Source: Pseudomonas aeruginosa PAO1
Lineage (GTDB): Bacteria; Pseudomonadota; Gammaproteobacteria; Pseudomonadales; Pseudomonadaceae
Assembly (NCBI RefSeq): GCF_000006765.1
Contig: NC_002516.2
DNA length: 64,000 nt
Direction: 5' to 3' (one strand)
The position numbers and the translations under genes are program-made. The notes under the pieces are model-generated. The model had not been told where the DNA came from. It saw only the letters and a list, made by a program, of their open reading frames with translations, and did no database searches. Below are positions 8,288 to 55,096 of this stretch, piece after piece (positions within the stretch are counted from its first letter, which is position 1; each line of letters starts with the position of its first letter).

Positions 8288-10192
8288 GTGTTCCCTTGCC
8301 TACCCCGTTCGCTACTCGCCGGCGTCCTGCTGGCGAGCGCCCTGCCCGCTCACGCGGAGCTGCCCCACGCGCCCGCCTACATCGATGACAGCGCCTACCC
8401 GGCCGCGGCCCGCCAGCGCATCCTGCCACCGATGTTCGAGCAGAGGCTGGGCAGCCTGCGCTACCTCGCCAAGCCCGGCGACCCCTTGATCACCCAGGCC
8501 GAGAGCAGCGACTTCCAGCGTACCAGCGACTACCGCGAGACCCGCGCCTACCTGGAGAAACTGGTAGCCGCCTCCTCCGGCCGCATCGCCCTGCGCGAGT
8601 TGCCCGAGCGCAGCGCCGAGGGTCACCCGATGCTGCTGGTGACCGCCTCCACCGAGGCCGACAAGTCCGCCGCCGGCCTGAAGCGCTCCGCCAAGCCGAC
8701 CTTGCTGGTGGAAGCCGAGATCCATCCCGGCGAGGCCAACGGCAAGGACGCCATGTTCATGCTGCTGCGCGACATGAGCGCTGCCGACCGCCCGCTCGCC
8801 GGGCTGCTGGAGAAGATCAACCTGCTGTTCATCCCGGTGGTCAACGTCGACGGCGACCTGCGCCGCAGCGCCTACGGGCGGATCAACCAGAACGGCCCGC
8901 AGGAGACCGGCTGGCGGGTGAACGGCCGCAATCTCAATCTCAACCGCGACTTCACCAAGCTCGACAGCGCGGAGATCCGCAACGTCGCCTGGGTGTTCAA
9001 CCACTACGAGCTGAGCTTCTTCGCCGACACCCACTCCACCGACGGCGCCATGTATCCCTACGACAGCTCCTACTGCCACAACGGCAACGGCTGGTCACCG
9101 GCGAGCAGCGCCTGGATGGACCAGGTCATGCGCAAGCCGGTGTACCAGGCGCTGGAAAGCCTCGGGCACATGGTCCATGAATGCATCAGCCTGAACGACA
9201 ACCAGGATCCGACCCAGGGCTACTACCCCTACCGCACCGACCTGGCGCGCTTCTCCAACCAGTACGGCGACATCCGCAACGTGCCGTCGATCCTCATCGA
9301 GCAACACGCCCTGCATCCGTACAAGACCCAGGTGCTGGGCAACTACGTGATGCTCAAGGCGATGTTCGAGGTGATCGGCGAGCAGGCCGCCAGCCTGCGC
9401 CAGGCCATCGCCAGCGACCGCGAGCGCCTGCTGCGGCAGAAGGAGGTGATCCTCACCTGGAAGCCGGGCGAGGTCGCCGAGACGCCGTTCGTGGTGGGCG
9501 ACTACCGCTACGAGCAATCGCCGGTCACCGGAGCCCGCACCATCGTCTGGAGCAACCGGCCGAAGACGCTGAAACTGCCGGTGACCGACAACGGCGTACC
9601 CGACCTGGTGGTGCCGCGTCCCCAGCGTTTCATCGTCCCGGCGCAGTGGCACGAGGTGATCGCCCGGATCAAGGCCCATGGCATCCGCTATAGCACCCTC
9701 GAGCGTCCGACCGAAATCGCCGTGACCCTGTACCGCATGGACGACATCAAGCTCGCCGATGGCTTCGAACCGGATCGCGTGCAAGGCAACCGGATTCCGG
9801 GCTACGAAGGTCGCCTGCTGGTCAGCGGCACGCCGAAGCCGTTCCAGCGCCTGCTGACCTTCCCGGCCGGCTCGCTGTCGATCGACACCGCCCAGCCGCT
9901 GGGCGTCCTGGCCATCGACCTGCTGCAACCGCAGAGTCCGGATTCCTTCTGGTCCTGGGGCTTCTTCAATTCCACCCTGGTGGCCGCCGAGGAGCCGGAG
10001 GAATACGTGATGGAGCCGATGGCGCGCAAGATGCTGGCGGAAGACCCGGCGCTGAAGGCCGCCTTCGACAAACGCCTGCGCGAGGACAAGGCCTTCGCCG
10101 CCGATCCGCAGGCGCGCCTGCAATGGTTCTACCAGCGCACGCCGTTCTACGACGTGAACGCCTTCGTCTATCCGGTAGGAGTGGTGTTCTGA
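8288..10192 (+). CDS. Exported M14-family zinc carboxypeptidase
   Basis: GTG start after GGAGG (634 aa). Signal peptide, IHPGE (HxxE), NVDG, NLNR and DTHS motifs. Confidence 0.85.
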   Translation: MFPCLPRSLLAGVLLASALPAHAELPHAPAYIDDSAYPAAARQRILPPMFEQRLGSLRYLAKPGDPLITQAESSDFQRTSDYRETRAYLEKLVAASSGRIALRELPERSAEGHPMLLVTASTEADKSAAGLKRSAKPTLLVEAEIHPGEANGKDAMFMLLRDMSAADRPLAGLLEKINLLFIPVVNVDGDLRRSAYGRINQNGPQETGWRVNGRNLNLNRDFTKLDSAEIRNVAWVFNHYELSFFADTHSTDGAMYPYDSSYCHNGNGWSPASSAWMDQVMRKPVYQALESLGHMVHECISLNDNQDPTQGYYPYRTDLARFSNQYGDIRNVPSILIEQHALHPYKTQVLGNYVMLKAMFEVIGEQAASLRQAIASDRERLLRQKEVILTWKPGEVAETPFVVGDYRYEQSPVTGARTIVWSNRPKTLKLPVTDNGVPDLVVPRPQRFIVPAQWHEVIARIKAHGIRYSTLERPTEIAVTLYRMDDIKLADGFEPDRVQGNRIPGYEGRLLVSGTPKPFQRLLTFPAGSLSIDTAQPLGVLAIDLLQPQSPDSFWSWGFFNSTLVAAEEPEEYVMEPMARKMLAEDPALKAAFDKRLREDKAFAADPQARLQWFYQRTPFYDVNAFVYPVGVVF

Positions 10193-10210
10193 GGCCCACC
10201 TGGGGCTGAC

Positions 10211-10241
10211 GGCGGATAACGCTGCGCGTTATCCGCCCTAC
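10211..10241 (-). repeat. GTAG-type REP element
   Basis: Perfect 12-bp stem ggcggataacgc/gcgttatccgcc. On the minus strand it is headed by GTAG. Confidence 0.8.
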
Positions 10242-10265
10242 CGCTGGGCTTCGGGAGCCCCGTTG

Positions 10266-10300
10266 CCTCTCCCGCTTGCGGGAGAGGGCTGGGGAGAGGG
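10266..10300. repeat. cctctccc...gggagagg palindromic intergenic repeat
   Basis: 10-bp stem cctctcccgc-tt-gcgggagagg, followed by a second ggggagaggg arm. Confidence 0.65.
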
Positions 10301-10308
10301 AGCCGGTC

Positions 10309-10785
10309 TCAGGTACCGTCGGTGGGTGTGGGCAGGTTGCTTCTCGGCTTGCGCTTGCGCCTGGGTTTCGGTGGTTTTTCGGGTGGCGGCGACAACTCCC
10401 GCTTGCGCACCTTCTTGAGGATTTCCCGATGCTTCTCGCGCCAGGCCGGCACGTCGAGACCGTGGAGTTCGAGCAGCTCGGGGTTACGCTCCACCAGATA
10501 GACCGCCGCTTCCTGGGCGGCCTCGGCGATCTTCCAGGCGATCGACTGCGGTTCGATGCTGCCTTCATAGGCGATCCAGTCGCTGAACTCCGGGAAGGTC
10601 CCGCAGACCTTCTCGAAATCCTCGTCGTGCATGCGCTGCCGGCCACTCTCGATGTTCTCAAGGCGTTTGGGATCCATGCCGACCACCTCGGAAAACTGCG
10701 GTCGGTTCAACCCCGTCAGCCCGCGCAACCCGAACAGGCGCTCGCCGGCGCGAAACAGGCAGCGCTTCCTCACTACATAGACCAT
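10309..10785 (-). CDS. XRE-family HTH repressor-like protein, copy B
   Basis: Start re-picked at MVYVVRKR (158 aa). HTH LNRPQFSEVVGMDPKRLENIE; paralogue of 10823..11299. Confidence 0.8.
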   Translation of the reverse strand: MVYVVRKRCLFRAGERLFGLRGLTGLNRPQFSEVVGMDPKRLENIESGRQRMHDEDFEKVCGTFPEFSDWIAYEGSIEPQSIAWKIAEAAQEAAVYLVERNPELLELHGLDVPAWREKHREILKKVRKRELSPPPEKPPKPRRKRKPRSNLPTPTDGT

Positions 10786-10822
10786 GTACAGATACTTCCC
10801 TTCGTTTCTGGCGCGATGCGCC

Positions 10823-11299
10823 TCAGTCGCCCTTGCCGCTCGCGGGCGTTTTCCTCTTCCGCTGGCGCCTGGGTTCCGGCGGCTCTTCCAGGGGCGCCGG
10901 CTCCGCCTCCGGCGCCTGTTCCGCCGCCAGCAGCGCCTCGCGTATCTCGCGGTGGCGTTCGCGCCAGGCCTGCATGTCGATGCCGTGCTGCTCAAGCAGC
11001 ACCGGGTTGCGCTCCACCAGGTAGACCGCGGCCGCCTGCGCCGAGTCGGCGACCTTCCAGGCGATCGACTGCGGCTCGATGCTGCCTTCATAGGCGATCC
11101 AGTCGCTGAACTCCGGGAAGGTTCCGCAGACCTTCTCGAAGTCCTCGTCGTGCATGCGCTGCAGCTCGTTCTCGATGTTCTCCAGGCGCTTGGCCGTCAT
11201 CCCCACCAACTCGGCGAACTGCGGACGGCTCAAGCCCATCAGCTCGCGCAGGGCGCGCAAGCGCTTGCCAGCAGTGAACAAACGTCGATTCTTTACCAT
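10823..11299 (-). CDS. XRE-family HTH repressor-like protein, copy A
   Basis: 158 aa. Classic XRE N-terminus GKRLRALRELMGLSRPQFAELVGMTAKRLENIE. Confidence 0.88.
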   Translation of the reverse strand: MVKNRRLFTAGKRLRALRELMGLSRPQFAELVGMTAKRLENIENELQRMHDEDFEKVCGTFPEFSDWIAYEGSIEPQSIAWKVADSAQAAAVYLVERNPVLLEQHGIDMQAWRERHREIREALLAAEQAPEAEPAPLEEPPEPRRQRKRKTPASGKGD

Positions 11300-11328
11300 G
11301 TGTAGTCCGCGTCTGATGGTTCCCTATG

Positions 11329-11363
11329 CATATTGATTCACTAACTGTTAGTAGATCAATATG
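11329..11363. promoter_or_regulatory. 35-bp imperfect palindrome, candidate operator of the divergent switch
   Basis: CATATTGAT-TC-ACTAAC-T-GTTAGT-AG-ATCAATATG. 15 of 17 positions pair; 10/35 GC in a GC-rich window. Confidence 0.75.
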
Positions 11364-11424
11364 AATCCAAGCCCTCTAGACCGAGGGTTCCCCTCCAACA
11401 TCGGACCATGGTGCAGGACGCCTG

Positions 11425-11655
11425 ATGAAAGTGGAAGAACTCCCCCAAGAGGGTTTCGCCGAGTGCCCCCGCTATATAACCCTGATGCGTTTCGCCTTCC
11501 TGACCGGCCTCAGCGACCGGCCGGACCTGCTCTACGCCTGGATAGAGAGCGGCGACCTGCCGATGCGAACCTTCGGCACGCAACGCCTGGTGGATATGCA
11601 GAAGCTGCAAAAACGCATCGAGGAAGCAAAAAAAGGGGCCGATTCAACCGGGTGA
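11425..11655 (+). CDS. Small Cox/Xis-like winged-HTH DNA-binding protein
   Basis: 76 aa. ITLMRFAFLTG...YAWIESGDLP..FGTQRLVDM fits the excisionase/Cox/AlpA pattern. Divergent from the repressor pair. Confidence 0.7.
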   Translation: MKVEELPQEGFAECPRYITLMRFAFLTGLSDRPDLLYAWIESGDLPMRTFGTQRLVDMQKLQKRIEEAKKGADSTG

Positions 11656-11666
11656 ATCGGCCCTTT
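11628..11666 (-). terminator. Intrinsic terminator of the pel operon, embedded in the 3' end of the Xis-like gene
   Basis: Stem gggccgattca/tgaatcggccc with loop accggg. A7 at 11628-11634 gives a U7 tail for the minus-strand transcript. Confidence 0.8.
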
Positions 11667-11695: not shown

Positions 11696-13066
11696 TCAGC
11701 GATTGAGCATGAAGGTCTCGTACTCCAGGTCGTCCAGCGCGGTGGTCAGGCGGTACAGCCCGACCAGCACGCAGACCAGCAGCGACAGGGTGAAGCCGTA
11801 GCCGAAGAAGCTCGGCCCGAGCAGCAGGCTGACGAAGGTCAGGGCGCCGTTGACGATCACGAACAGCACGCAGAGTTCGAGGACGATGCGGCGCTTGTCC
11901 AGGTAGAAGAAGACGTTGAGCAAGGCCATGAACACTACCTGGATGCTCACCCCGATCAGGTCGATGTAGAACAGCGGCAGGTAATAGCGGGAAATTCCCA
12001 GCCAGCCGAGCAGTTGCGGCGCCAGCAGGAACAGCAGGACCACCGCCAGCCCCTGCACCTTGCAGATTTCCAGCAGGCCCTGGCGGATGGCGAGGATCAT
12101 CTGCTCCTTGAGCAGGCCGATGTGCTGCAGGGTCTCTCCGCCGCGGATCGCCTCGTAGACCCGCTCGTACCACTCGGCGAAGTCGGTCTCGATGCGCACC
12201 AGGAACACCGCCATGCCGGGAATGATCGACAGGTAGGCGAGGAAGATCGGCAGGTCGTAGAGGATCGAGGCGCGCAGCGGGCCGATCACCAGGTCCGAGG
12301 TGGAGGGGTTGAACCAGAAGATGAACTTGTCGATCCAGATCCCCAGGTTGTAGCAGAGGCCGGTCAGCAGCAGGCTGACGAAGACCTGCCGGCGGTCGAG
12401 GAAGTCGAAGGCCACCATGCGCCTGGCCGGGTACTCGCGGAGGATGTCGTAGAGGAAGACGAACAGCAGGCTGGCGTGGCCGATCAGCAATGCCAGCAGC
12501 AGGCCGTCCATCTGCATGAAACGCAGCAGGTAGGCACAGGCGACCATCAGCGCGTAGCCGATGAACATCACCAGCAGGATGCGTTTGTAGGCCTTCATTC
12601 CCGACAGGAAGATGATCACCAGCCACAGGTTGCAGAGCACCACGAAGTTGGCCATCACCAGCAGGCGGTAGGCGAACGGCTCATCGAACAGGGTCGCCAG
12701 CAATATCGCCGAGAGCAGGCCCGCCGCCAACGTCACCAGCAACAGCACGCCCACCAGGTTGGGCAGGATCGCCTCGTGCTTGCGCTCGAACAGGCGATCG
12801 GAAATGAAGCGGGTGAAGAACAGTTGCAGTCCCCCGGTGAAGATCAGCGACAGCGCCATCAGGTAGGTCACCGTGATCAGGAACTGCCGGACCAGCACGT
12901 CCGGCACCACCACGCCGAGGCTCAGCACGCCGATCAGCATCACGCTGACGATCGACAGCACCCAGGGACCGGAGCTGATCAGCCCGGCGTAGAGGTAGGC
13001 GCGCAGGGTCGCCGTATAGGAATCGCGGGAAAGGATCTTCCGCAGTTCGAAGCCGATGCCGGCCAT
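11696..13066 (-). CDS. pelG: Pel polysaccharide inner-membrane transporter PelG
   Basis: Start MAGIGFELRK (456 aa), multi-pass membrane protein, last gene of the pel cluster. Confidence 0.95.
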   Translation of the reverse strand: MAGIGFELRKILSRDSYTATLRAYLYAGLISSGPWVLSIVSVMLIGVLSLGVVVPDVLVRQFLITVTYLMALSLIFTGGLQLFFTRFISDRLFERKHEAILPNLVGVLLLVTLAAGLLSAILLATLFDEPFAYRLLVMANFVVLCNLWLVIIFLSGMKAYKRILLVMFIGYALMVACAYLLRFMQMDGLLLALLIGHASLLFVFLYDILREYPARRMVAFDFLDRRQVFVSLLLTGLCYNLGIWIDKFIFWFNPSTSDLVIGPLRASILYDLPIFLAYLSIIPGMAVFLVRIETDFAEWYERVYEAIRGGETLQHIGLLKEQMILAIRQGLLEICKVQGLAVVLLFLLAPQLLGWLGISRYYLPLFYIDLIGVSIQVVFMALLNVFFYLDKRRIVLELCVLFVIVNGALTFVSLLLGPSFFGYGFTLSLLVCVLVGLYRLTTALDDLEYETFMLNR

Positions 13067-13067
13067 G

Positions 13068-14591
13068 TCATGCAATCTCCGTGGCTTCGCGGTACAGCCC
13101 GCGGTAACGTCCGAGCATCAGCGCCTCGGTGTAGTAGCGTTCGACCCGTTGCAGGCCGACCGCCTGGGCCGCCTGCCAGCGCTGCGGATTGCGCAGCAGG
13201 GCGAGGATCGCCCGCGAAGTGGCCTGCGGGTCGGCGATCGCCACCACCTCCCCGGCGCGACCCAGGGCGCGATCTTCGGCGTCGGCGCCTTCGATCAGTT
13301 CGCGGCAGGAGCCGACGTCGCTGCTCACCACCGGGGCGCCGGCAGCCCAGGCTTCGAGGATCACCAGCGGCTGCGCTTCGCTGATCGAGGTGAGGACCAT
13401 CAGGCCGAGTTGCGGCAGGACCTCGCCGATCCGACGGAAACCGAGGAACTTCACCTTGTCCTGCAGGCCGAGGCTGGCCACCAGGCTGCGGCATTCGCTG
13501 GCATAGTCCGGATCTTCCTCCTCCGGACCGACGATCCAGCCCTCCGCCTCCGGCATCGCGCTGACCACCCCGCGCATGGCGCGGATGAAGGTCTTCACGT
13601 CCTTGATCGGCACTACCCGGCCGACCAGCCCGACCACCGGCGGAATCCCCGGCGGCCGCCGTTCGAGGGCGCCGGTCCAGGCATCGAGGTCGATGCCGTT
13701 GGGGATCACCCGGGTGCGCCGTGGCTCGGCGCCATCGAGTACCTGGCGCTGGCGGTTGCCTTCGTAGAGGGCGACGATCGGATTGGCGGCGCGATAGGTG
13801 AGCAGGCCGACACGCTCGAAGAAGCGGATCCACAAGCGACGGATGTAGCTGACCTCGGCATCCAGTCCGGTACTCAGCTGCTCGTCGGGGTTCTCCGCGA
13901 TCCAGTTGGCCTGGGCCAGGTCGATCTTGCGCTCCTTGGTGTAGATGCCGTGCTCGCTGAGCAGGTAGCGGCAGCCCCAGCGACGTTGCAGGATGCAGCC
14001 CAGCAGGCCGGCGTAGCCGGTGGAGATCGAGTGCAGCATGCGCGCCCGCGGCATCCGCCGGGCCGCCTCGGCGAGCATGAACACCGGCGCCTGCATCGAG
14101 CGCAGGGTCCAGAAGTAATTGACGAAGGACGGATCGGTGCAATAGCGCTCGTAGCCTGCGGTGATCGCCTCCCAACTGGCCTTGCTGTGGAGAAAGTCCT
14201 CGCGGCCGATGCGGCCCTCGGCGAGCAGGTCGAGCAGCGCGTCGCCCTCCTCCACGTCCGGCGTCTCCGGGTAGTGGAAGAAACGGTGCAGATCGCGCAA
14301 CGCCTTTTCGGTCTCGCTACTGCCCTGTCGCGTCTGCGGGTTCGGCGAACTCCAGGCGGTTTCCAGGAAGTGTTCCTCGATGTGCAGCACATTGTCCGGG
14401 ATCGGGTAGTGGCGCTTGCCGTAGGCATCCTTCTGGCCGCCGATGAAGAACACCGAGAAGGTCAGGTCGGGGAGACCGAGGATCAACTGGTTGACCCAGC
14501 TGGAGACGCCGCCGCGGACATAGGGCCAGGTGCCCTCCAGCAGCAGGCAGACATCGGCGACGGGCGCCGTCGGAGCGGTGTGTTCGGTCAT
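13068..14591 (-). CDS. pelF: GT4 glycosyltransferase PelF
   Basis: 507 aa. EGTWPYVRGGVSSW start region and the EX7E motif EAQPLVILE. Confidence 0.96.
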   Translation of the reverse strand: MTEHTAPTAPVADVCLLLEGTWPYVRGGVSSWVNQLILGLPDLTFSVFFIGGQKDAYGKRHYPIPDNVLHIEEHFLETAWSSPNPQTRQGSSETEKALRDLHRFFHYPETPDVEEGDALLDLLAEGRIGREDFLHSKASWEAITAGYERYCTDPSFVNYFWTLRSMQAPVFMLAEAARRMPRARMLHSISTGYAGLLGCILQRRWGCRYLLSEHGIYTKERKIDLAQANWIAENPDEQLSTGLDAEVSYIRRLWIRFFERVGLLTYRAANPIVALYEGNRQRQVLDGAEPRRTRVIPNGIDLDAWTGALERRPPGIPPVVGLVGRVVPIKDVKTFIRAMRGVVSAMPEAEGWIVGPEEEDPDYASECRSLVASLGLQDKVKFLGFRRIGEVLPQLGLMVLTSISEAQPLVILEAWAAGAPVVSSDVGSCRELIEGADAEDRALGRAGEVVAIADPQATSRAILALLRNPQRWQAAQAVGLQRVERYYTEALMLGRYRGLYREATEIA

Positions 14592-23891: not shown

Positions 23892-24017
23892 GCCCAGCCT
23901 ACGCGGCAGGGTCGATACCGACCGAAGCGGCAGGTCGGAAGCATGGATGCGGTTTCCGGTGGCAACGTCGAATCCCTGGCAGTGCGGGCACGGGCAAAGC
24001 AGCCGCAGGCGATTAAC

Positions 24018-24031
24018 GTCAATCTAATGAC
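24018..24031. promoter_or_regulatory. FleQ box (proximal) of the pelA promoter
   Basis: GTCAATCTAATGAC matches the GTC-N8-GAC FleQ consensus. FleQ control of pel through two boxes is established. Confidence 0.8.
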
Positions 24032-24067
24032 TAAATATGCTAATTGCTAAATTTTTAAGCGGAAACT

Positions 24068-25986: not shown

Positions 25987-26430
25987 TCAGGGCTCCTCGA
26001 ATTGCGCCAGGCGTGTCAGCAACGGACCGGCCGCCGCCAGCAGGGCGCGCTCGCTCTCGTCGAGACAGGCGTGCATGGCACGCACCAGCCATTCTTCGCG
26101 CTTGGCGCGGTTGCCGTAGAGATTTCGCCGGCCCTCCGAGCTCAGCGACACGCGGGTTCTGCGCCCATCTTGCGGATCGGCGTGACGGACGATCAGCCCT
26201 CCGCGTTCCAGTTCGCGCAGCAGCGCGGCCAGATTCGACGAGCGCATCCGCTCGGCGGCGGCCAGCTCGGAAGGTGTGACGTCGCCGCCAAGGCGGTCGA
26301 TCGCGCCAAGCACGACCAGTTGCGAGAATTGCACCGGATCGGCCTGCGCCTCGCGACGCAGGCGGCGGGTCAGGGTGGTGACCTGGCTGCGCAGATGCGC
26401 TGCCAGTTGGAGATCCTGGTTGGTGGGCAT
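25987..26430 (-). CDS. MarR-family transcriptional regulator
   Basis: 147 aa with winged-helix pattern TPSELAAAE...LERGGLIVR..DPQDGR. Confidence 0.92.
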   Translation of the reverse strand: MPTNQDLQLAAHLRSQVTTLTRRLRREAQADPVQFSQLVVLGAIDRLGGDVTPSELAAAERMRSSNLAALLRELERGGLIVRHADPQDGRRTRVSLSSEGRRNLYGNRAKREEWLVRAMHACLDESERALLAAAGPLLTRLAQFEEP

Positions 26431-26525
26431 ATTTATCTACATAATCATAGCTATATTTTCATAGCAAAATAACACATCCAACGCCGCCCGCCATGGGACC
26501 CGACCGACGGCACGACAGCTGAAAT

Positions 26526-26577: not shown

Positions 26578-29500
26578 TCAGGGGATGCAGACACCGTGCT
26601 GGCTGCTCTGCGCCAGGTCCATCAGCTCGCGGTTGGCCACGGCGTACATGGCGTAGTCGGTACCCGACGCGGCACGCAGTTCGACCAGCATCGCCCGCCA
26701 GCGCTCGACCAGCGGCAGGTGCTGTTCCAGCCACAGGCCGACGCGAGCCTCGACCTCCTTCGGTCCGTCCTGCATCTGCAACACCGAGACGGTGATCGCC
26801 CGCTGCTGCCAGTCGAGGTCGTCGCGGAACGCCTCGCGGGCCAGCGCCTGCCAGTTGTTCTCCACCGGCAGGTTGGTGATCTGTTGCAGGTACCAGGTCA
26901 GGTCCAGCGCGCTGCCCACGGCGAAATAGGCCTTGGCCACTTCCGCGGTGTCCTGGCCGGTCACGTCGGACGCCTCGATGATCGGCAGCAGCGTGTACAA
27001 GTGGCTGGTACCGGCCACCATGCGTGCCAGCAGTTCCGGCACGCCGGCGTCGACGTAGGTCTGGTAGCGCGCCTGCCACAGCTCGCGGGTCGGCCCTTCG
27101 AGCAGCTCGTTGAGCTTCAGGCCGAGGGCGGCGATGCGCGGGCCGAAGTGGGCCACGTCGCGCGCCGCGTCCAGCTCGTTGCGGCGGCTGCGGAGGAACC
27201 AGCGGGTGGCGCGGCGGCCGAGGCGCATCAGTTCGTCCATCAGGGTCAGCTGGATATCAGCGGGCACCTGGTAGTCGAGATTCTCGATCTGGCGGAACCA
27301 ATGCGGCAGGTGGAATACGTCGCGGACGATCACGTAGGCCCCGGCGACGTTGGCCGCGCTCATGCCGGTGGACTCCTTCAGGCGCTGCACGAAGGTGATG
27401 CCCATGTGGTTGACCAGGTCGTTGGCGATCTGCGTGCTGACGATCTCGCGCTTCAGGCGATGGCGGCGCATGGCGTCGCCGAACTTCTCCGCCAGCAATG
27501 CCGGGAAGGCGGTCTCCATGTCGCGGGTCAGGTAGTCATCGTCGGGCACCAGCGATTTCAGCAGCGATTCCTTGAGGTCGATCTTGCTGTAGGAGATCAG
27601 CACCGACAGCTCGGCGCGGGTCAGCCCCTGGCCGGCACTGATGCGTTCCGCCAGCTCCTCGTCGGAAGGCAGGAACTCCAGGGCGCGATCGAGCTTGCCA
27701 CGCGCCTCGAGGTCGCCCATCAGCCGCTTGTACTCGGCGATCCGCTCGCGGGCGCGACGTTGCGCCAGGGACAGCGCCTGGGTCTGCTTGTAGTTGTTGC
27801 CCAGCACCAGGGCGCCGACCGCGTCGGTCATCTTCACCAGCAGCGCGTTGCGCTGCTTCTCGGTCATGTCGCCGGCCTGCACCACTTCGTTGAGCAGGAT
27901 CTTGATGTTGACCTCATGGTCGGAGCAGTCCACGCCACCGGCGTTGTCGATGAAGTCGGTGTTGTTGGCACCGCCGTGCAGGCCGAACTCGACCCGCGCC
28001 AGTTGGGTCATGCCCAGGTTGCCGCCCTCGCCCACCACCTTCGCGCGCAACTCGCGGCCGTCGACGCGCAGACCATCGTTGGCCTTGTCGCCGACATCGG
28101 CGTGGGTTTCCTTGCTCGACTTCACGTAGGTACCGATCCCGCCGTTCCAGAGCAGGTCGACCGGCGCCTTGAGCAGCGCATGGATCAGCTCGGTGGGCGC
28201 CAGCCTGTCGGCCTGGATGTCGAAGCGCGCCTTCATTTCCGGGGTGATGGCGATGCTCTTGGCGCTGCGCAGGAAGATCCCGCCGCCGGCGGAGATCAGC
28301 TTGGCGTCGTAGTCGGCCCAGCTCGAACGCGGCAGGTTGAACAGGCGCTGGCGCTCGACGAAGCTGCTGGCGGCGTCCGGGTTCGGGTCGATGAAGATAT
28401 GCATGTGGTTGAAGGCGGCCACCAGTTGCAGCTTGTCCGACATCAGCAGGCCGTTGCCGAACACGTCGCCGGCCATGTCGCCGATGCCGATGACGCTGAT
28501 GTTGTCCTTCTGCACGTCGATGCCGCGTTCGCGGAAGTGCCGTTGCACGCTGACCCAGGCGCCCTTGGCGGTAATCCCCATGCCCTTGTGGTCGTAGCCG
28601 GCGGAGCCGCCCGAGGCGAAGGCGTCGCCGAGCCAGAAGCCGTACTCGGCGGCGATGCCGTTGGCGATGTCGGAGAAGGTCGCCGTGCCCTTGTCCGCGG
28701 CGACCACCAGGTAGGGATCGTCCTCGTCGTGGCGGACCACGTTGGCCGGCGGCACCACTTCGCCTTCCTTGAGGTTGTCGGTGATATCGAGCAGGCCGGA
28801 AATGAAGATCCGGTAGCAGGCGATCGCCTCGGCCTGGATCTCGTCGCGGCTACCGCCAAGCGGCAGGCGGCGCGGGACGAAGCCGCCCTTGGCGCCGACC
28901 GGCACGATCACCGCGTTCTTCACCTGCTGGGCCTTGACCAGGCCGAGCACCTCGGTGCGGAAGTCTTCCTCGCGGTCCGACCAGCGCAAGCCGCCGCGAG
29001 CCACCTTGCCGCCGCGCAGGTGCACGCCCTCGACGCGCGGCGAGTAGACGAAGATCTCGTACTTGGGCACCGGCCTGGGCAGCTCCGGAATGGCCTTCGG
29101 GTTGAACTTGAAGCTGAAGTAGCTCTTGTTCTGGCCGTTGCCGTCGGGCTGGTAGAAGTTGGTCCGCAGGGTCGCCTTGATCAGGTCGAGGTAGCGCCGC
29201 AGGATGCGGTCCTCGTTGAGCACCTGGACTTCGTCGAGGGCACCGAGGATCGCCTGCTCCAGCTTCTGTTGCTTGTCTTCCAGGTCTTCCGCGGTGAGTT
29301 TGCGCGCCAGGTAGAAGCGGGTCTTGAACAGCCGCACCAGCTCGCGGGCGATGTCGGTGTGGGCATTCAGCGCACTGGCGATGTAGCCGAGGTCGAAGCC
29401 CAGGCGGATCTGCTTCAGGTAACGCGCGTAGGCACGCAGCAGGGCGACGTCGCGCCACGGCAGGTTGGCGGTCAGCACCAGGCGGTTGAAGGCGTCGTTC

Positions 29501-31440
29501 TCGGCGTCGCCGCTGACGATGTGGACGAAGGCGTCCTGGAGGATCTCGTTGAGCTGCTGGATGTCCACGTCCAGCCCTTCGGCGTAGGTGAAGGCGAAGT
29601 CGTGGATCCAGTATTCGCGGCCGTTCTGGTGGCGCAGGCGGTAGGGGAATTCGCCGAGCACGCGCAGGCCGAGGTTCTCCAGGATCGGCAGGACGTCGGA
29701 CAGGGCCAGCGGGGTGTCGGCGTGGTACAGCTTGCAGTGCAGTTGCTGCTCGCCCTGCGCCAGCGGCTGGTAGAAGCTCATCACCAGCGGGCGCTGCTCG
29801 GAGAGGCTGAGCAGGTGCTGCAGGTCGACCACCGCGAAGTGCGGGGCGAAGCGCTCGCGGTAGCCGGCCGGGAAGCCTTTCGGGAAGTCGGCCAGGACGT
29901 TGGTGCCCTTGGCCTCGCCGAGGTTTTCCACCACCAGGCTGCTGTAGTCGTCCTGCCAGGAACGGCAGGCCTGGATCACTTCTTCCTCCAGGCGCGCCGG
30001 GTCGATGTCGATGCGCGACTTCGGGTCGACGCGGAGGATGAACTGCACGCGGGCCAGCACCGACTCGGAGAAGAAGGTCCAGAACTCGCAGTCGCTCGCC
30101 TGCAGGCGCTCCATCAGGACCTGCTGGATCTTCAGGCGCGTCTCGGTGGAATACACGTCGCGCGGCACGTAGGCCAGGCAGTAGCAGAAGCGACCGTAGG
30201 GGTCCTTGCGCAGGAACACGCGGATCTTGTTGCGCTCCTGGATGCGGACGATCGCCAGGGCGGTGCTGAACAGCTCGTCCACCGGGGTCTGGAACAGGTC
30301 GTCGCGCGGCAGTACTTCCAGCACCTGGGCCAGTTCCTTGCCGAGGTGGGCCTTGGTGTCGAAACCGGAGCGCCGCATCACTTCGGCGACCTTGCCGCGG
30401 ATGAAGGGGATGTCGTTGACGCTCTCGTTGTACACCGAGGAGGTGAACAGGCCCATGAAGCGGCACTCGCGGATCACCCGGCCCTTGCCGTCCAGCTCGC
30501 GGATCGACACGTAGTCCGGGTAGGCCGGGCGGTGCACACGGCTCGGATGGGCAGCCTTGGCGAAGGACAGCAGGACCGGTTCGCGCAGGTAGGCGACGGC
30601 ATAGTCCTCGATGTGCAGGTCATCCTTGCTCAGGCCGGCACGCAGCAGACGGGTCAGGCCGAGGAAGGATTTCTCGTCGTAGACCATGCGCCCGCCGTCG
30701 GCCTCGTCGGCGACGCTGAATTCCTCGTAGCCGAGGAAGGTGAAGTGGTTGTCCAGCAGCCATTCGAGATAGCTGCGTACTTCCTTCAGTTCCTCCGCCG
30801 GCACCTTCAGCTTGGCCTTGCCAAGCCAGGTCAGCAGTTCGCGGGCCTTGGCCTTCATCGGTTCGAAGTCGGCGACGGTCACGCGTACTTCACCGAGCAC
30901 TTCCAGGATGGCCTTCTCCAGCGCCCGCAGTTCGCCGGCGTGGGCGCAACGGTCGATCTCCAGGTACATCAGCGATTCCTGGCTGACGTCCTTGCCCTGG
31001 CTACCCTTGGGCAGGATTTCCTTCAGCTCGCCCTTGGCCGAGCGGCGCACGCTGAGGACGTTGGTCTGCAGGGTATGGATGCTGTAGCCGCGACGGTTCA
31101 GTTCCATGCGCACCGAGTCGACCAGGAACGGCAGGTCCGGGTGCAGCACTTCTACCGCGGTGTGGGTGGATTGCCAGCCGTGCTTCTCGTAGTCGGGGTT
31201 GTATACGCGGACTTCGGGCTGGTCGCGGTCGAAGCGCTCCAGCAGGCGCCAGGCGGAAAGGGTGCAACCGACCAGGTCGGAAAGCCGACGCTGGGTCAGT
31301 TCATCGAGGGAGATCAGGCTGAAGAACTGTTCGGCGAACAGCGTGACTTGTGGTAACGCCTTGTCGCCGAGGTGCTGCGCCAGTGCCGTCTGCAGTTGAT
31401 GCTGGAAATCGGCTTTGCTGGCCGCGGTGAAGAACGCCAT
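26578..31440 (-). CDS. gdhB: Large NAD-specific glutamate dehydrogenase
   Basis: 1620 aa. ARGGLRWSDR, GAKGGF, VAADKGTA, GEGGN and DNAGGVDCSDHEVN motifs. Confidence 0.97.
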   Translation of the reverse strand: MAFFTAASKADFQHQLQTALAQHLGDKALPQVTLFAEQFFSLISLDELTQRRLSDLVGCTLSAWRLLERFDRDQPEVRVYNPDYEKHGWQSTHTAVEVLHPDLPFLVDSVRMELNRRGYSIHTLQTNVLSVRRSAKGELKEILPKGSQGKDVSQESLMYLEIDRCAHAGELRALEKAILEVLGEVRVTVADFEPMKAKARELLTWLGKAKLKVPAEELKEVRSYLEWLLDNHFTFLGYEEFSVADEADGGRMVYDEKSFLGLTRLLRAGLSKDDLHIEDYAVAYLREPVLLSFAKAAHPSRVHRPAYPDYVSIRELDGKGRVIRECRFMGLFTSSVYNESVNDIPFIRGKVAEVMRRSGFDTKAHLGKELAQVLEVLPRDDLFQTPVDELFSTALAIVRIQERNKIRVFLRKDPYGRFCYCLAYVPRDVYSTETRLKIQQVLMERLQASDCEFWTFFSESVLARVQFILRVDPKSRIDIDPARLEEEVIQACRSWQDDYSSLVVENLGEAKGTNVLADFPKGFPAGYRERFAPHFAVVDLQHLLSLSEQRPLVMSFYQPLAQGEQQLHCKLYHADTPLALSDVLPILENLGLRVLGEFPYRLRHQNGREYWIHDFAFTYAEGLDVDIQQLNEILQDAFVHIVSGDAENDAFNRLVLTANLPWRDVALLRAYARYLKQIRLGFDLGYIASALNAHTDIARELVRLFKTRFYLARKLTAEDLEDKQQKLEQAILGALDEVQVLNEDRILRRYLDLIKATLRTNFYQPDGNGQNKSYFSFKFNPKAIPELPRPVPKYEIFVYSPRVEGVHLRGGKVARGGLRWSDREEDFRTEVLGLVKAQQVKNAVIVPVGAKGGFVPRRLPLGGSRDEIQAEAIACYRIFISGLLDITDNLKEGEVVPPANVVRHDEDDPYLVVAADKGTATFSDIANGIAAEYGFWLGDAFASGGSAGYDHKGMGITAKGAWVSVQRHFRERGIDVQKDNISVIGIGDMAGDVFGNGLLMSDKLQLVAAFNHMHIFIDPNPDAASSFVERQRLFNLPRSSWADYDAKLISAGGGIFLRSAKSIAITPEMKARFDIQADRLAPTELIHALLKAPVDLLWNGGIGTYVKSSKETHADVGDKANDGLRVDGRELRAKVVGEGGNLGMTQLARVEFGLHGGANNTDFIDNAGGVDCSDHEVNIKILLNEVVQAGDMTEKQRNALLVKMTDAVGALVLGNNYKQTQALSLAQRRARERIAEYKRLMGDLEARGKLDRALEFLPSDEELAERISAGQGLTRAELSVLISYSKIDLKESLLKSLVPDDDYLTRDMETAFPALLAEKFGDAMRRHRLKREIVSTQIANDLVNHMGITFVQRLKESTGMSAANVAGAYVIVRDVFHLPHWFRQIENLDYQVPADIQLTLMDELMRLGRRATRWFLRSRRNELDAARDVAHFGPRIAALGLKLNELLEGPTRELWQARYQTYVDAGVPELLARMVAGTSHLYTLLPIIEASDVTGQDTAEVAKAYFAVGSALDLTWYLQQITNLPVENNWQALAREAFRDDLDWQQRAITVSVLQMQDGPKEVEARVGLWLEQHLPLVERWRAMLVELRAASGTDYAMYAVANRELMDLAQSSQHGVCIP

Positions 31441-53889: not shown

Positions 53890-54152
53890 CAGTGCACGGA
53901 GTCCGACTTGAACAGGATGTTCGGGATCGGCTCGTCGGAATGCGAGGAGCAGTGCTGCGGGCCCATGTAGCCGGTGCGCTCCTCCTCGGGGAGGTTCTGC
54001 AGCTCCCAGGCGATCACCGCCTGCAGGCAGAGTTCCTTCTGCTCCTGGGTCAGCTTGCGGCCGTCCGGCCACTTGCCGATCTCGATGGCCAGCTTGAGGT
54101 TCTGGTAGATCTCAGGAGTGATGTTCTCGATCGCTTGATTGAAGGACGACAT
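53889..54152 (-). CDS. YeaC/DUF1315-family protein
   Basis: 87 aa. AIEIGKWPDGRKLTQEQKELCLQAVIAW. Confidence 0.88.
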   Translation of the reverse strand: MSSFNQAIENITPEIYQNLKLAIEIGKWPDGRKLTQEQKELCLQAVIAWELQNLPEEERTGYMGPQHCSSHSDEPIPNILFKSDSVH

Positions 54153-54235
54153 GGCCGGCTCCGGTGAAAAGGCGTACCGGCCATTCTACCGGGCCGGGGC
54201 CGGCGGCGCACATCGAAGCTGCCGCAGCCCCTCGC

Positions 54236-55096
54236 TCAACGGCGACGCCGCGCCAGCAGGCCGCCCAGCAAACCGCTGAGGCAACCGACCAGCAGCCCGC
54301 CAACGTGCGCGCCGTTGGCGATGGAGCCGAAGCCGAGCAGGTCGATCACCCCGGACAGGCACACCAGCAGCCAGATCAGCATCATCGCCACGACGCCCCT
54401 GGGCAGGCGATAGGCCTGGTTCGGCGCCAGGTACTGGAAGATCCAGCAGTGCCCGAGCAAGCCATAGAGCACCCCGGACAACCCGCCGAACAGGCTGGCG
54501 CCGCTCACCGCGTACTGCACCACGTTGGACACCAGGCCGAACAGCAGGGTCAGGCCGAGCAGCATCGGACGGCCCTGGCGGAATTCGATGCGCCGGCCCA
54601 GCTCCCAGAACCACATGGCGTTCATCGCCAGGTGCAGCCAGCCGAAGTGGATCAGCATCGGCGTGAACAGCCGCCACCATTGACCCGCCGCCAGGCTCTC
54701 GGCCAACGGCGTGAACAGCGCGTACTGGCCCTGGATACGGAAGTCCTGGAAGGTCAGCCAGCGCATCGTCGCGAAGTTGTCGCCAAGGTAGGTGACAGCG
54801 GCGACGACGAAGGTCAGCAGCAACACCGCGGCGGTCATCGGGCTCATCCGCAGTTGCCGGACGAAACCCTGCCCCGCCGGTCGCGGCGCGGCCTCCAGGG
54901 TCGCCTGCGGATCGCCTTCGGGATAACGCCGGTACAACTCGCGGACCTGCTCGGCGAGCCGCTCGTCGGGCACCCAGAGGACCTGCTGGCCGGATTCCTC
55001 GCTGACCCGGTGCGGCACGTTCAGCCGCCGCAGCAGGCCGACGAAGCCGGCCAGGTCGACCGACAGGGGAAACTTCAGGACCTGCACCGCGCTCAC
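54236..55096 (-). CDS. Rhomboid intramembrane serine protease (GlpG-like)
   Basis: WWR, HFGWLHL, GLSG (catalytic Ser) and AHVGG (catalytic His). Confidence 0.92.
   Translation of the reverse strand: MSAVQVLKFPLSVDLAGFVGLLRRLNVPHRVSEESGQQVLWVPDERLAEQVRELYRRYPEGDPQATLEAAPRPAGQGFVRQLRMSPMTAAVLLLTFVVAAVTYLGDNFATMRWLTFQDFRIQGQYALFTPLAESLAAGQWWRLFTPMLIHFGWLHLAMNAMWFWELGRRIEFRQGRPMLLGLTLLFGLVSNVVQYAVSGASLFGGLSGVLYGLLGHCWIFQYLAPNQAYRLPRGVVAMMLIWLLVCLSGVIDLLGFGSIANGAHVGGLLVGCLSGLLGGLLARRRR

What the first reader, a model, noticed from the sequence alone, without database searches (positions are those of the whole stretch)
10309..11655. Orphan temperate-phage-type genetic switch (two repressors plus a Cox/Xis-like gene) attached to the end of the pel operon
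Seen in sequence: two tandem XRE-HTH genes on the minus strand are divergent from a 76-aa winged-HTH gene, across a 125-bp spacer with an AT-rich palindrome. The neighbours are a peptidase and pelG; the window has no integrase or structural phage gene. Established knowledge: a back-to-back repressor and Cox/Xis pair sharing an operator is the lysis-lysogeny switch of P2-like phages (C/Cox) and Pf inoviruses (Pf4r/XisF4). The segments LSRPQFAELVG...FPEFSDW and RFAFLTG...WIESGDLP resemble my recollection of those families; this is not a search result. Inference: a domesticated switch that could give stand-alone immunity against Pf/P2-like phages, interfere with resident prophage excision, or act as a bistable host regulator linked to biofilm matrix. 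Pf phage and Pel are both biofilm-associated.
Basis: partly seen in the sequence, partly recalled or inferred. Interest (0 to 1): 0.85.

Follow-up and report, generated by a model that had tools for sequence, protein, structure and literature searches.

The report
Chromosomal XRE repressors facing Cox-like regulator
This is a real but uncharacterised regulator cassette of Pseudomonas aeruginosa (PA3055-PA3056-PA3057) that is laid out like a phage C/Cox switch, yet it is an old core-chromosome gene pair that only this lineage has next to the pel biofilm operon, not a leftover phage switch tied to it.

Summary
Two tandem 158-aa XRE-HTH genes (10309-10785 and 10823-11299, minus strand; 76% identical) face a 76-aa winged-helix gene (11425-11655) across 125 bp. 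That spacer holds the only 20+20-nt palindrome in the 64 kb.

The small protein is Cox/excisionase-like. Its model's top PDB match is P2 Cox, and hhalign gives 87% probability. The XRE proteins are generic 434-type HTH plus a family-specific helical domain, and are not P2 C/Pf4r-like.

The pair is not a phage orphan. Nine other loci from Pseudomonas-type genomes carry the XRE gene and small gene divergently, with a co-varying CTAA-N3-TTAG operator 46-48 nt upstream of the XRE start. All but one (P. flavescens) lie beside the pyrD-rmf block; two of these, and one locus without the small gene, also have gdhB on the other side. None shows integrase or phage genes within the flanks read. Only P. 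aeruginosa and P. paraeruginosa have pel on one side, PA3053-54 on the other, and a duplicated XRE gene.

In relatives the small gene is followed by variable small cargo, including a QslA-family gene.

The most likely function is an autoregulated repressor/counter-regulator pair with an unknown regulon. Neither a link to Pel nor phage immunity is supported. Interest is moderate.

The parts
10309..10785 (-). XRE-family HTH gene, distal tandem copy (PA3055-type), 158 aa, with a basic C-terminal tail (KPRRKRKPR)
   Evidence: ORF and translation. HTH_31 at 22 bits, phrog_147 at E 1.4e-9. 76% identical to the proximal copy. dN/dS against P. paraeruginosa is 0.19 for codons 1-125. The protein was detected by proteomics as PA3055 (PMC10805311).
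10786..10822 (-). 37-bp gap between the two XRE genes, with an AGGGA ribosome-binding site. No palindrome, so the genes are probably co-transcribed.
   Evidence: Sequence. Co-transcription is inferred.
10823..11299 (-). XRE-family HTH gene, proximal copy (PA3056-type), 158 aa. HTH at residues 10-57, a family-specific helical domain at 58-128, and a basic tail (PRRQRKRK).
   Evidence: HTH_31 at 31 bits, above the cut-off of 27. AlphaFold2 pLDDT is 79, with high confidence for residues 10-70 and 80-128. Foldseek matches only the HTH part: C.BclI, ClgR, SinR, DdrO, CapH, HigA, P22 c2. The family profile matches the 434 repressor DNA-binding domain at E 1e-4.
11300..11424 (.). 125-bp divergent control region
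11326..11366 (.). Imperfect 41-nt palindrome (core ACTAAC-T-GTTAGT at 11340-11352), the putative dimer operator. It lies between TTGATY (-35-like) and CAATAT (-10-like) hexamers that can be read on both strands.
   Evidence: Unique in the window. A CTAA-N3-TTAG core sits 46-48 nt upstream of the XRE ATG in the orthologous spacers where it was measured. The outer base changes symmetrically (ACTAA/TTAGT against CCTAA/TTAGG). The promoter hexamers are my reading; the consensus scan found none at its threshold.
11408..11418 (+). Conserved ATGGTGCAGGA motif (Shine-Dalgarno sequence plus flanking bases), 6 nt upstream of the small-gene ATG here
   Evidence: Nearly invariant in nine loci. Hairpin predictions are not significant.
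11425..11655 (+). Small Cox/excisionase-type winged-helix gene (PA3057-type), 76 aa. The conserved part ends near K70, and the last six codons are encoded by the pelG terminator hairpin.
   Evidence: AlphaFold2 pLDDT 79.5 with winged-helix topology. Foldseek finds P2 Cox, RdfS, BldC and Pukovnik Xis, and phage excisionases. hhalign against P2 Cox gives 87% probability. dN/dS is 0.13. Orthologues occur in nine further loci. A promoter fusion was measured in MPAO1 (PMC3197603).
11636..11663 (-). GC-rich hairpin followed by a T-run, the intrinsic terminator of pelG. It is shared head-on with the 3' end of the small gene.
   Evidence: and the sequence.
11628..11634 (.). A7 run (codons K69-K70 of the small gene, and the T-tail of the pelG terminator). 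It is the insertion point of a conjugative element in many other P. aeruginosa strains.
   Evidence: Homology of L013 and L023 to the window ends at 11633 and is followed by DUF2274 and trbI-G-F-L-J-E-D-C-B.

Best explanation
PA3055/PA3056 and PA3057 form a self-contained, core-chromosomal transcription-factor cassette.

Proposed mechanism, all inferred:
- The XRE proteins dimerise through their family-specific C-terminal helical domain.
- The dimer binds the palindrome (core ACTAAC-N-GTTAGT). This sits in the spacer of two overlapping divergent promoters.
- Binding therefore autoregulates the PA3056-PA3055 operon and represses PA3057.
- PA3057 is a Cox/excisionase-type winged-helix DNA-binding protein. 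It is the output and counter-regulator. With no partner recombinase, it probably acts as a transcription factor on the shared control region and/or distal sites, not as an excisionase.

In sister species the small gene is translationally coupled to a variable small cargo gene: an 84-91-aa family of unknown function, or a QslA-family gene. In P. aeruginosa that cargo is absent. The pel operon lies in its place, and the repressor gene has been duplicated, with a changed start of the recognition helix (MTAKR against MDPKR).

Shown here: the gene content, folds, operator conservation and covariation, synteny, and purifying selection.
For: - Domain and fold assignments.
- The palindrome is unique in the window and AT-rich.
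- In nine loci the operator core lies at a near-constant position, 46-48 nt upstream of the XRE ATG where measured. The outer base changes symmetrically on both arms, as expected of a site bound by a dimer.
- The XRE gene and small gene are divergent in nine further loci. Eight lie beside pyrD-rmf, most with DUF6685, and L009 also has gdhB on the other side; the P. flavescens locus L008 has other neighbours.
- gdhB lies at window 26578-31440 on the expected strand, so pel plus about 2.6 kb sits between gdhB and the small gene.
- Purifying selection: dN/dS is 0.13 for PA3057 and 0.19-0.29 for the folded parts of the XRE genes.
- The 4-nt ATGA overlap between the small gene and the cargo gene is seen in L005, L008 and L009.
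- The QslA-family cargo scores 34.8 bits against a cut-off of 25.
- The PA3055 protein is detected by proteomics (PMC10805311). A PA3057 promoter-gfp fusion was measured in biofilm and planktonic cells and showed no difference between them (PMC3197603).
Against: - No binding, transcript-start or regulation data exist for this locus. Searches for PA3055-57 found nothing in the HT-SELEX or ChIP-seq atlases or under my guessed PA14 locus tags.
- The consensus promoter scan found no sigma-70 site at its threshold.
- Which protein binds the palindrome is unknown.
- P. knackmussii keeps the XRE gene without the small gene, so the pair is not obligatory.
- The Cox-like assignment rests on several weak-to-moderate signals. 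None passes a curated threshold: HTH_17 scores 16 bits against 27, and the Foldseek E-value is 0.19.
Confidence: 0.55

Rival explanations
1. One reading: a domesticated or orphan temperate-phage immunity switch (P2 C/Cox or Pf4r/XisF4 type). It would give stand-alone immunity to Pf/P2-like phages or interfere with prophage excision.
For: The architecture matches, and the small protein's best structural match is P2 Cox. Spacer lengths are similar: 125 bp here, and 114 bp between C and cox in P2.
Against: - The XRE proteins are not C-like (hhalign 14%). Pf4r is reported to be 42% identical to P2 C (PMC7379572).
- Neither protein has a tblastn hit in 50,697 phage genomes.
- IMG/VR gives one hit only. 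It is a provirus call that begins at the first base of PA3056 and so includes the two XRE genes, next to a Mu-like prophage.
- The operator pattern occurs only in eight low-GC (34-37%) environmental contigs.
- The pair lies beside pyrD-rmf in many loci with no integrase in the flanks read.
Confidence: 0.07
2. A lineage-specific regulator of Pel or biofilm. After pel was placed beside it, the cassette was rewired. It could act through PA3057 on pel promoters, or through convergent transcription from PA3057 into the pelG 3' end.
For: PA3057 converges on pelG, with 40 bp between the stop codons and a shared terminator hairpin. The XRE duplication coincides with the lineage that has pel here.
Against: - No second copy of the operator core occurs anywhere in the 64 kb, including upstream of pelA.
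- The pair predates the juxtaposition with pel and occurs next to unrelated genes elsewhere (pga genes, an amidohydrolase, YkuD, EamA, gdhB).
- PA3057 promoter activity was the same in biofilm and planktonic cells (PMC3197603).
Confidence: 0.1
3. A type II antitoxin-like or defence-system regulator (HipB/HigA/PezA-type, or CapH-type) whose partner toxin or effector lies nearby.
For: One pipeline labels PA3055 'antitoxin HipB' (PMC10805311). There are weak HTH-only hits to PezA, HipB, CapH and RmrA models.
Against: - All hits cover only the generic HTH and are far below the curated cut-offs.
- No toxin, CapP protease or defence gene is adjacent in any of the loci read.
- The small partner is a DNA-binding winged helix.
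Confidence: 0.05
4. Host-encoded recombination-directionality or gatekeeper function. PA3057 would act on mobile elements that integrate at its own 3' end.
For: A Trb-type conjugative element is inserted exactly in the A7 run inside PA3057 codons 69-70 in strains carrying the 91-aa variant, which is recorded on 350 contigs. The closest folds are excisionases (P2 Cox, RdfS).
Against: - The cassette exists in element-free strains and in species without that element.
- The insertion site is the T-tail of a terminator, so it may simply be a favoured AT-run target.
- No Cox-box-like repeats were identified.
Confidence: 0.04
5. A decaying remnant with no present function.
For: The cargo gene is absent in P. 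aeruginosa. The tails of the XRE proteins evolve fast (dN/dS 0.47-0.69). Some strains have collapsed the tandem pair into one hybrid gene.
Against: - The ORFs are intact and under purifying selection.
- The genes are recorded on well over a thousand P. aeruginosa contigs.
- The operator is conserved.
- The protein is detected.
Confidence: 0.05

Closest known systems
Phage P2 immunity switch: C repressor and Cox (Peduoviridae)
   Same: An HTH repressor gene is divergent from a small winged-helix gene across a control region of about 115-125 bp. The small protein's best structural match is P2 Cox (4lhf), and its HTH segment aligns to Cox at 87% hhalign probability.
   Different: - The repressor is not C-like.
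- There is no integrase, attP or early operon.
- It has one central palindrome, not the O1/O2 direct half-sites with face-to-face Pe/Pc promoters annotated in P2.
- The repressor gene is duplicated.
- It sits in the core chromosome of a Pseudomonas clade.
Pf4 switch Pf4r/XisF4 of P. aeruginosa inoviruses (PMC7379572)
   Same: Divergent repressor and excisionase-type genes in the same species. In Pf4 the 5' UTRs overlap and the two proteins repress each other, which is the behaviour proposed here.
   Different: - Pf4r is a P2 C relative, and the XRE proteins here are not.
- XisF4 is described as AlpA-like with no similarity to Cox, whereas PA3057 leans toward Cox.
- The locus is not in a prophage.
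- There is no tblastn similarity to any phage record.
Domesticated repressor/activator pairs of P. aeruginosa: PrtR-PrtN (pyocins) and AlpR-AlpA (alpBCDE lysis genes). These are recalled from my own knowledge.
   Same: Chromosomal, phage-style repressor plus small DNA-binding output protein controlling cargo genes. A PrtN-named protein appears among the structural matches of PA3057 (rank 22).
   Different: As recalled, PrtR and AlpR are LexA/CI-like with an S24 self-cleaving domain and respond to DNA damage. The XRE proteins here have a different, unassigned helical C-terminal domain with no Peptidase_S24 hit. In P. aeruginosa no cargo gene follows the small gene.
HTH_17 / excisionase (MerR-like winged helix) superfamily, for example RdfS, Pukovnik Xis and BldC
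   Same: The same strand-helix-helix-strand-strand core. The nearest outgroup sequences are mostly HTH_17.
   Different: The protein scores below the Pfam cut-off (16-22 bits against 27). The family proper is small, at about ten 50%-identity clusters. Nearly all named members come from Pseudomonas genomes.

Membership tests
P2-type C/Cox switch | The small protein belongs to the Cox family (Pfam Phage_Cox / Cox fold) | tested here: inconclusive
   Foldseek top PDB hit is 4lhf (probability 0.98, TM 0.57, E 0.19). hhalign probability is 87% over 27 columns. Phage_Cox scores E 0.027 in one orthologue, below its cut-off. phrog_575 scores E 0.029. The profile against the 4lhf sequence gives E 0.87.
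P2-type C/Cox switch | The repressor is homologous to P2 C (and so to Pf4r) | tested here: not met
   hhalign of the XRE family profile against P2 C gives 14% probability, over the generic HTH only. No phage tblastn hit.
P2-type C/Cox switch | Linked to an integrase and attP inside a prophage | tested here: not met
   The window has no phage DNA beyond four short matches and no tRNA gene. The flanking genes are an M14 peptidase and pelG. No integrase or phage gene appears in the flanks of the relatives' loci that were read.
P2-type C/Cox switch | Mutual repression from face-to-face or overlapping promoters | not testable with these tools
   Only weak promoter hexamers read by eye. The consensus scan found none.
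Pf inovirus Pf4r/XisF4 switch | Encoded within a Pf prophage and similar in sequence to XisF4 or Pf4r | tested here: not met
   Not in a prophage. tblastn against the phage collection is negative for both proteins. A direct profile comparison with XisF4 was not possible because no sequence was at hand.
XRE (434 Cro/CI-type) HTH regulators | HTH_31 / HTH_3 domain | tested here: met
   PA3056-type: HTH_31 at 31 bits, above the cut-off of 27. PA3055-type: 22 bits, and 76% identical to the former. Foldseek probability 1.00 to C.BclI, SinR, DdrO and P22 c2. 434 DNA-binding domain at E 1e-4.
HTH_17 / excisionase superfamily | Winged-helix topology and a match to the HTH_17 profile | tested here: inconclusive
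   The topology is met. HTH_17 scores 16 bits for PA3057 and 21-22 bits for orthologues, against a cut-off of 27. 39 of 60 nearest outgroup proteins match HTH_17.
LexA/CI-like domesticated repressors (PrtR, AlpR) | C-terminal S24 peptidase (self-cleavage) domain | tested here: not met
   No Peptidase_S24 hit. The C-terminal domain is all-helical and unassigned.
Type II toxin-antitoxin (HipB/HigA/PezA antitoxin) | An adjacent cognate toxin gene, and an antitoxin model above its cut-off | tested here: not met
   NCBIfam hits score 17-18 bits against cut-offs of 72-290. No toxin-like neighbour in any locus read.
CapH/CapP-type defence regulators | An adjacent CapP protease and a defence operon | tested here: not met
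   The capH model hit covers the HTH only (E 2e-5). The other five proteins scanned (small genes and cargo genes of this locus and of L005) gave no PADLOC hit apart from one very weak mad1 match (E 0.025).

The most novel reading that the evidence does not exclude
The cassette may be a chromosomal two-state toggle that has been kept for a long time at one edge of a highly plastic insertion site. On this reading, its Cox-like output protein controls whatever cargo lands downstream: a QslA-family quorum-sensing anti-activator in P. flavescens, and the p84 family elsewhere. In P. aeruginosa the duplicated, diverged repressors and PA3057 would act on new targets. Candidates are the convergent pel 3' end, or the conjugative element that integrates inside PA3057's last codons.
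Probability: 0.12. Interest if true: 0.65.

Novelty: new member of a known kind. Interest (0 to 1): 0.35.

Why it matters
PA3055-PA3057 are conserved, expressed and unstudied regulators. They sit directly beside a major biofilm operon of an important opportunistic pathogen.

This work settles that they are a phage-style repressor/Cox-like pair in form only. They are ancestral to the chromosome and were placed beside pel secondarily. That prevents an attractive but unsupported story of Pf/P2 immunity linked to Pel.

It also gives a concrete, cheap set of experiments:
- a defined operator;
- two paralogous repressors with different recognition-helix starts;
- a small output protein.

Two further leads may interest specialists in Pseudomonas regulation and mobile elements. 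The first is the QslA-family cargo in a relative. The second is the repeated mobile-element insertions at both ends of the cassette.

Tried and rejected
- tblastn of PA3056 and PA3057 against 50,697 phage genomes gave nothing.
- IMG/VR scans with both family profiles gave only a P. aeruginosa provirus call that starts at the first base of PA3056 and so includes the two XRE genes. The element itself is a Mu/BcepMu-like prophage joined 17 bp after the PA3055 stop. I treat this as coincidental.
- An exact scan for the operator pattern in IMG/VR gave eight hits. All are in 34-37% GC environmental contigs and are irrelevant.
- PADLOC and NCBIfam gave only generic HTH hits.
- A consensus RNA structure for the small gene's 5' UTR found no pairs. 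Single-sequence folds of the conserved AUGGUGCAGGA region were not better than shuffles, except in one species.
- The five-to-six-codon mini-ORF (MVQDA-type) that overlaps the small gene's ATG is not kept in P. flavescens, so I dropped it.
- The p84 cargo has no Pfam, NCBIfam or PDB match and no relation to the QslA-like cargo.
- Literature searches for PA3055-57, for my guessed PA14 tags, and in the supplements of the HT-SELEX and ChIP-seq atlases found no functional data.
- The consensus promoter scan of the spacer found nothing at its threshold.
Full report
**What is there**

The window is P. aeruginosa chromosome. PA numbers are my mapping from the remembered PAO1 gene order (PA3058 = pelG); published tables name PA3055 an XRE-family regulator and treat PA3057 as a gene with its own promoter.

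- Two tandem genes lie on the minus strand, at 10823-11299 (PA3056-type) and 10309-10785 (PA3055-type). Each encodes 158 aa with an N-terminal XRE helix-turn-helix. HTH_31 scores 31 and 22 bits, and phrog_147 scores E 1e-10 and 1e-9. They are 76% identical over 119 residues.
- On the plus strand, 125 bp away, is a 76-aa gene (11425-11655, PA3057-type).
- The spacer is 50% GC in a 67% GC window. It contains a 41-nt imperfect palindrome at 11326-11366 (27% GC). This is the only inverted repeat with 20-nt arms and at least 17 matches in the whole 64 kb. Its 13-nt core ACTAACTGTTAGT has no second copy even with two mismatches allowed.
- The neighbours are an M14 carboxypeptidase (ending at 10192) and pelG (11696-13075, PF16933 at 509 bits).
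- There is no tRNA gene. No phage-like DNA is detectable in the window except four short matches (97-951 nt) far from the locus.

**What the proteins are**

*The small protein.*
- Its AlphaFold2 model (pLDDT 79.5) has the order strand-helix-helix-strand-strand-helix, a winged helix.
- Its best match among solved structures is 4lhf, P2 Cox (probability 0.98, TM 0.57). RdfS excisionase, BldC and Pukovnik Xis follow.
- Among predicted viral structures the top matches are excisionase and HTH_17 proteins.
- A profile of 23 family members aligns to P2 Cox with 87% hhalign probability over the helix-turn-helix and the start of the wing: FA-L-G...V--WI--G-LP.
- Curated sequence models are only grazed. 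HTH_17 scores 16-22 bits against a cut-off of 27. Phage_Cox scores E 0.027 in one orthologue. phrog_575 'Cox-like excisionase and repressor' scores E 0.029.
- An exhaustive HMM search of 1.84 billion representatives found only 161 proteins at E up to 1e-3 and 15 at E up to 1e-10. Of 60 outgroup hits, 39 match HTH_17, 13 match Phage_Cox and 8 match MerR.
- I conclude that PA3057 is a diverged, narrowly distributed branch of the excisionase/Cox winged-helix superfamily.

*The XRE proteins.*
- They have a generic 434/Cro-type HTH. The family profile matches the 434 repressor DNA-binding domain at E 1e-4, and Foldseek finds C.BclI, ClgR, SinR, DdrO, CapH and HigA.
- They also have a confidently modelled all-helical C-terminal domain (residues 58-128), which matches nothing specific.
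- Against P2 C, hhalign gives 14% probability. Pf4r is reported to be 42% identical to P2 C (PMC7379572), so a Pf4r relationship is unlikely too.
- Neither protein has a tblastn hit in 50,697 phage genomes.

**Where it comes from**

Homologues of both proteins are named almost exclusively from Pseudomonas.

The XRE gene and the small gene are divergent neighbours in nine further loci, all from Pseudomonas-type genomes: P. paraeruginosa, P. citronellolis, P. borbori, P. flavescens, four unnamed or possibly mislabelled genomes, and one metagenomic contig.

- In eight of these loci the pair lies beside the pyrD-rmf block. In seven of the eight, DUF6685 (the PA3052 type) is present as well.
- The P. 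flavescens locus (L008) has different neighbours, with an EAL-domain gene next to the XRE gene.
- gdhB lies on the other side in P. borbori and P. knackmussii.
- P. knackmussii has the XRE gene but no small gene.
- No locus shows an integrase or phage gene within the flanks read.

In the window, gdhB lies at 26578-31440 on the matching strand. So in the P. aeruginosa and P. paraeruginosa lineage the pel operon, plus about 2.6 kb, lies between gdhB and the small gene. PA3053-PA3054 lie between the XRE gene and PA3052. The XRE gene is duplicated only in this lineage. The paralogue dS is 0.78, against an orthologue dS of 0.40-0.53, so the duplication predates the split of the two species.

Adjacency to pel is therefore lineage-specific. 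In P. citronellolis the far-side neighbours include pgaC/D-like genes (identified by eye). In others they are an amidohydrolase-type gene (also by eye), YkuD or EamA.

The cassette is under purifying selection. dN/dS is 0.13 for PA3057 and 0.19-0.29 for the folded parts of the XRE genes, while the tails evolve faster.

**The control region**

- Aligned spacers from nine loci keep a CTAA-N3-TTAG core. Its centre is 46-48 nt upstream of the XRE start codon where measured.
- The outer base changes symmetrically: ACTAA/TTAGT in P. aeruginosa, P. flavescens and P. borbori, against CCTAA/TTAGG in the citronellolis group. That is the signature of a site read by a symmetric dimer.
- In P. aeruginosa the core is flanked by TTGATY and CAATAT hexamers that can be read as -35 and -10 on both strands. 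The operator would then lie in the spacer of two overlapping divergent promoters. This is my reading; the consensus scan found nothing at its threshold.
- A second conserved element, ATGGTGCAGGA, lies just upstream of the small gene's start.

**Cargo in relatives**

- In four species the small gene is followed by an 84-91-aa gene with no known family. The 4-nt ATGA overlap with the small gene was checked in L005 and L009.
- In P. flavescens the following gene is a 98-aa QslA-family protein (PF18226, 34.8 bits against a cut-off of 25), also with a 4-nt overlap.
- In two genomes, and in P. aeruginosa, nothing follows.
- The small gene thus looks like the first gene of a small, variable output operon. 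P. aeruginosa retains the regulators only.

**Most likely mechanism (inference)**

XRE dimers bind the palindrome, autoregulate their own operon and repress PA3057. PA3057 is a Cox-type DNA-binding protein without a partner recombinase. It most likely acts as a transcription factor on the shared region or on distal sites.

The two paralogues differ at the start of the recognition helix (MTAKR against MDPKR). They share a 109-nt tract with three or fewer mismatches, against 79% identity overall, which suggests gene conversion. They may form heterodimers or read different sites.

Expression is documented. The PA3055 protein is detected by proteomics and is lower in a cprS mutant (PMC10805311). 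A PA3057 promoter-gfp fusion was measured in MPAO1 and showed no difference between biofilm and planktonic cells (PMC3197603).

**Comparison and verdict**

- The cassette works like, and looks like, a C/Cox or Pf4r/XisF4 switch in layout. Its small protein is Cox-like in fold.
- It fails the membership tests for those systems on the repressor, the prophage context and the recombination partner.
- The better functional analogues are domesticated chromosomal pairs such as PrtR-PrtN and AlpR-AlpA (from my own knowledge). Those use LexA-like repressors, which these are not.
- The proposed links to Pf/P2 immunity and to Pel have no computational support. No operator copy occurs elsewhere in the window or in Pseudomonas-like viral contigs.
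- It is a real, conserved, uncharacterised regulator cassette. I class it as a new member of a known kind, of moderate interest.

Noticed in passing
window 11628-11634; L013 2700-5276; L023 10277-20276: In P. aeruginosa strains with a 91-aa PA3057 variant (recorded on 350 contigs), homology to the window stops at 11633. That point is inside the A7 run, which is the T-tail of the pelG terminator and codons 69-70 of PA3057. It is followed by DUF2274 and a trbI-G-F-L-J-E-D-C-B operon, the end of a Trb-type conjugative element (Tn4371-like by my recollection). The element replaces the last six codons of PA3057.
   Followed up: partly
window 10292; L007 991-6456: In one IMG/VR P. aeruginosa provirus, a Mu/BcepMu-like prophage end is joined 17 bp after the PA3055 stop. 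It carries a Dam-type methylase, tail-fibre assembly and tail-fibre genes, and gpI/J/W baseplate genes. Its best relative is Pseudomonas phage Komp_PAO1_1. The provirus call begins at the first base of PA3056 and so includes the two XRE genes.
   Followed up: partly
L014 1908-2375 (corresponds to window 10309-11299): Some strains carry a single 155-aa hybrid XRE gene. It has the PA3056 N-terminus and the PA3055 C-terminus. It arose by deletion of window 10728-10958 through recombination between the tandem paralogues.
   Followed up: partly
window 10959-11250 against 10436-10727 (codons 46-82 of both XRE genes): A 109-nt tract has three or fewer mismatches between the paralogues, against 79% identity overall. 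Synonymous sites are conserved too, which suggests gene conversion.
   Followed up: partly
window 11408-11418, and the same position in L001-L006, L008 and L009: The motif ATG(G/T)TGC(A/G)GGA is almost invariant just upstream of the small gene's start. It is more conserved than a ribosome-binding site needs to be. It resembles the CsrA/RsmA CAnGGAyG consensus (my recollection). Folding gave no significant hairpin.
   Followed up: partly
L008 4375-4668; L005 5417-5668; L009 4379-4651: The gene translationally coupled to the small winged-helix gene differs between species. In P. flavescens it is a QslA-family (LasR anti-activator) protein. In four others it is an unassigned 84-91-aa protein with an invariant C-x-C-R-H-P...F-Y-Y-R-W-L-P motif.
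   Followed up: partly
window 10309-10400 and 10823-10900 (C-terminal tails of both XRE proteins): The P. aeruginosa and P. paraeruginosa copies end in Lys/Arg-rich tails (PRRQRKRK, KPRRKRKPR). Most orthologues in other species have acidic tails instead.
   Followed up: no
window 11636-11663: The last six codons and the stop codon of PA3057 lie inside the pelG terminator hairpin. The two convergent genes therefore share one terminator, and the conserved part of PA3057 ends near K70.
   Followed up: yes
window about 24012-24060 and 26428-26475: These are the two most AT-rich 41-mers of the window (20-24% GC). One lies just upstream of the pelA end of the pel operon, and the other lies next to gdhB. 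They were not examined.
   Followed up: no
window 28475-28571 and 54091-54314: Short 99-100% identical matches to positions 173-526 of Pseudomonas phage vB_PaeM_RP15. They probably reflect host-derived or repeat DNA in that record.
   Followed up: no
window 10193-10308: The gap between the peptidase gene and PA3055 contains GC-rich, repeat-like sequence (for example GGGAGAGGGCTGGGGAGAGGGAG). This is the segment next to the Mu-like insertion point.
   Followed up: no
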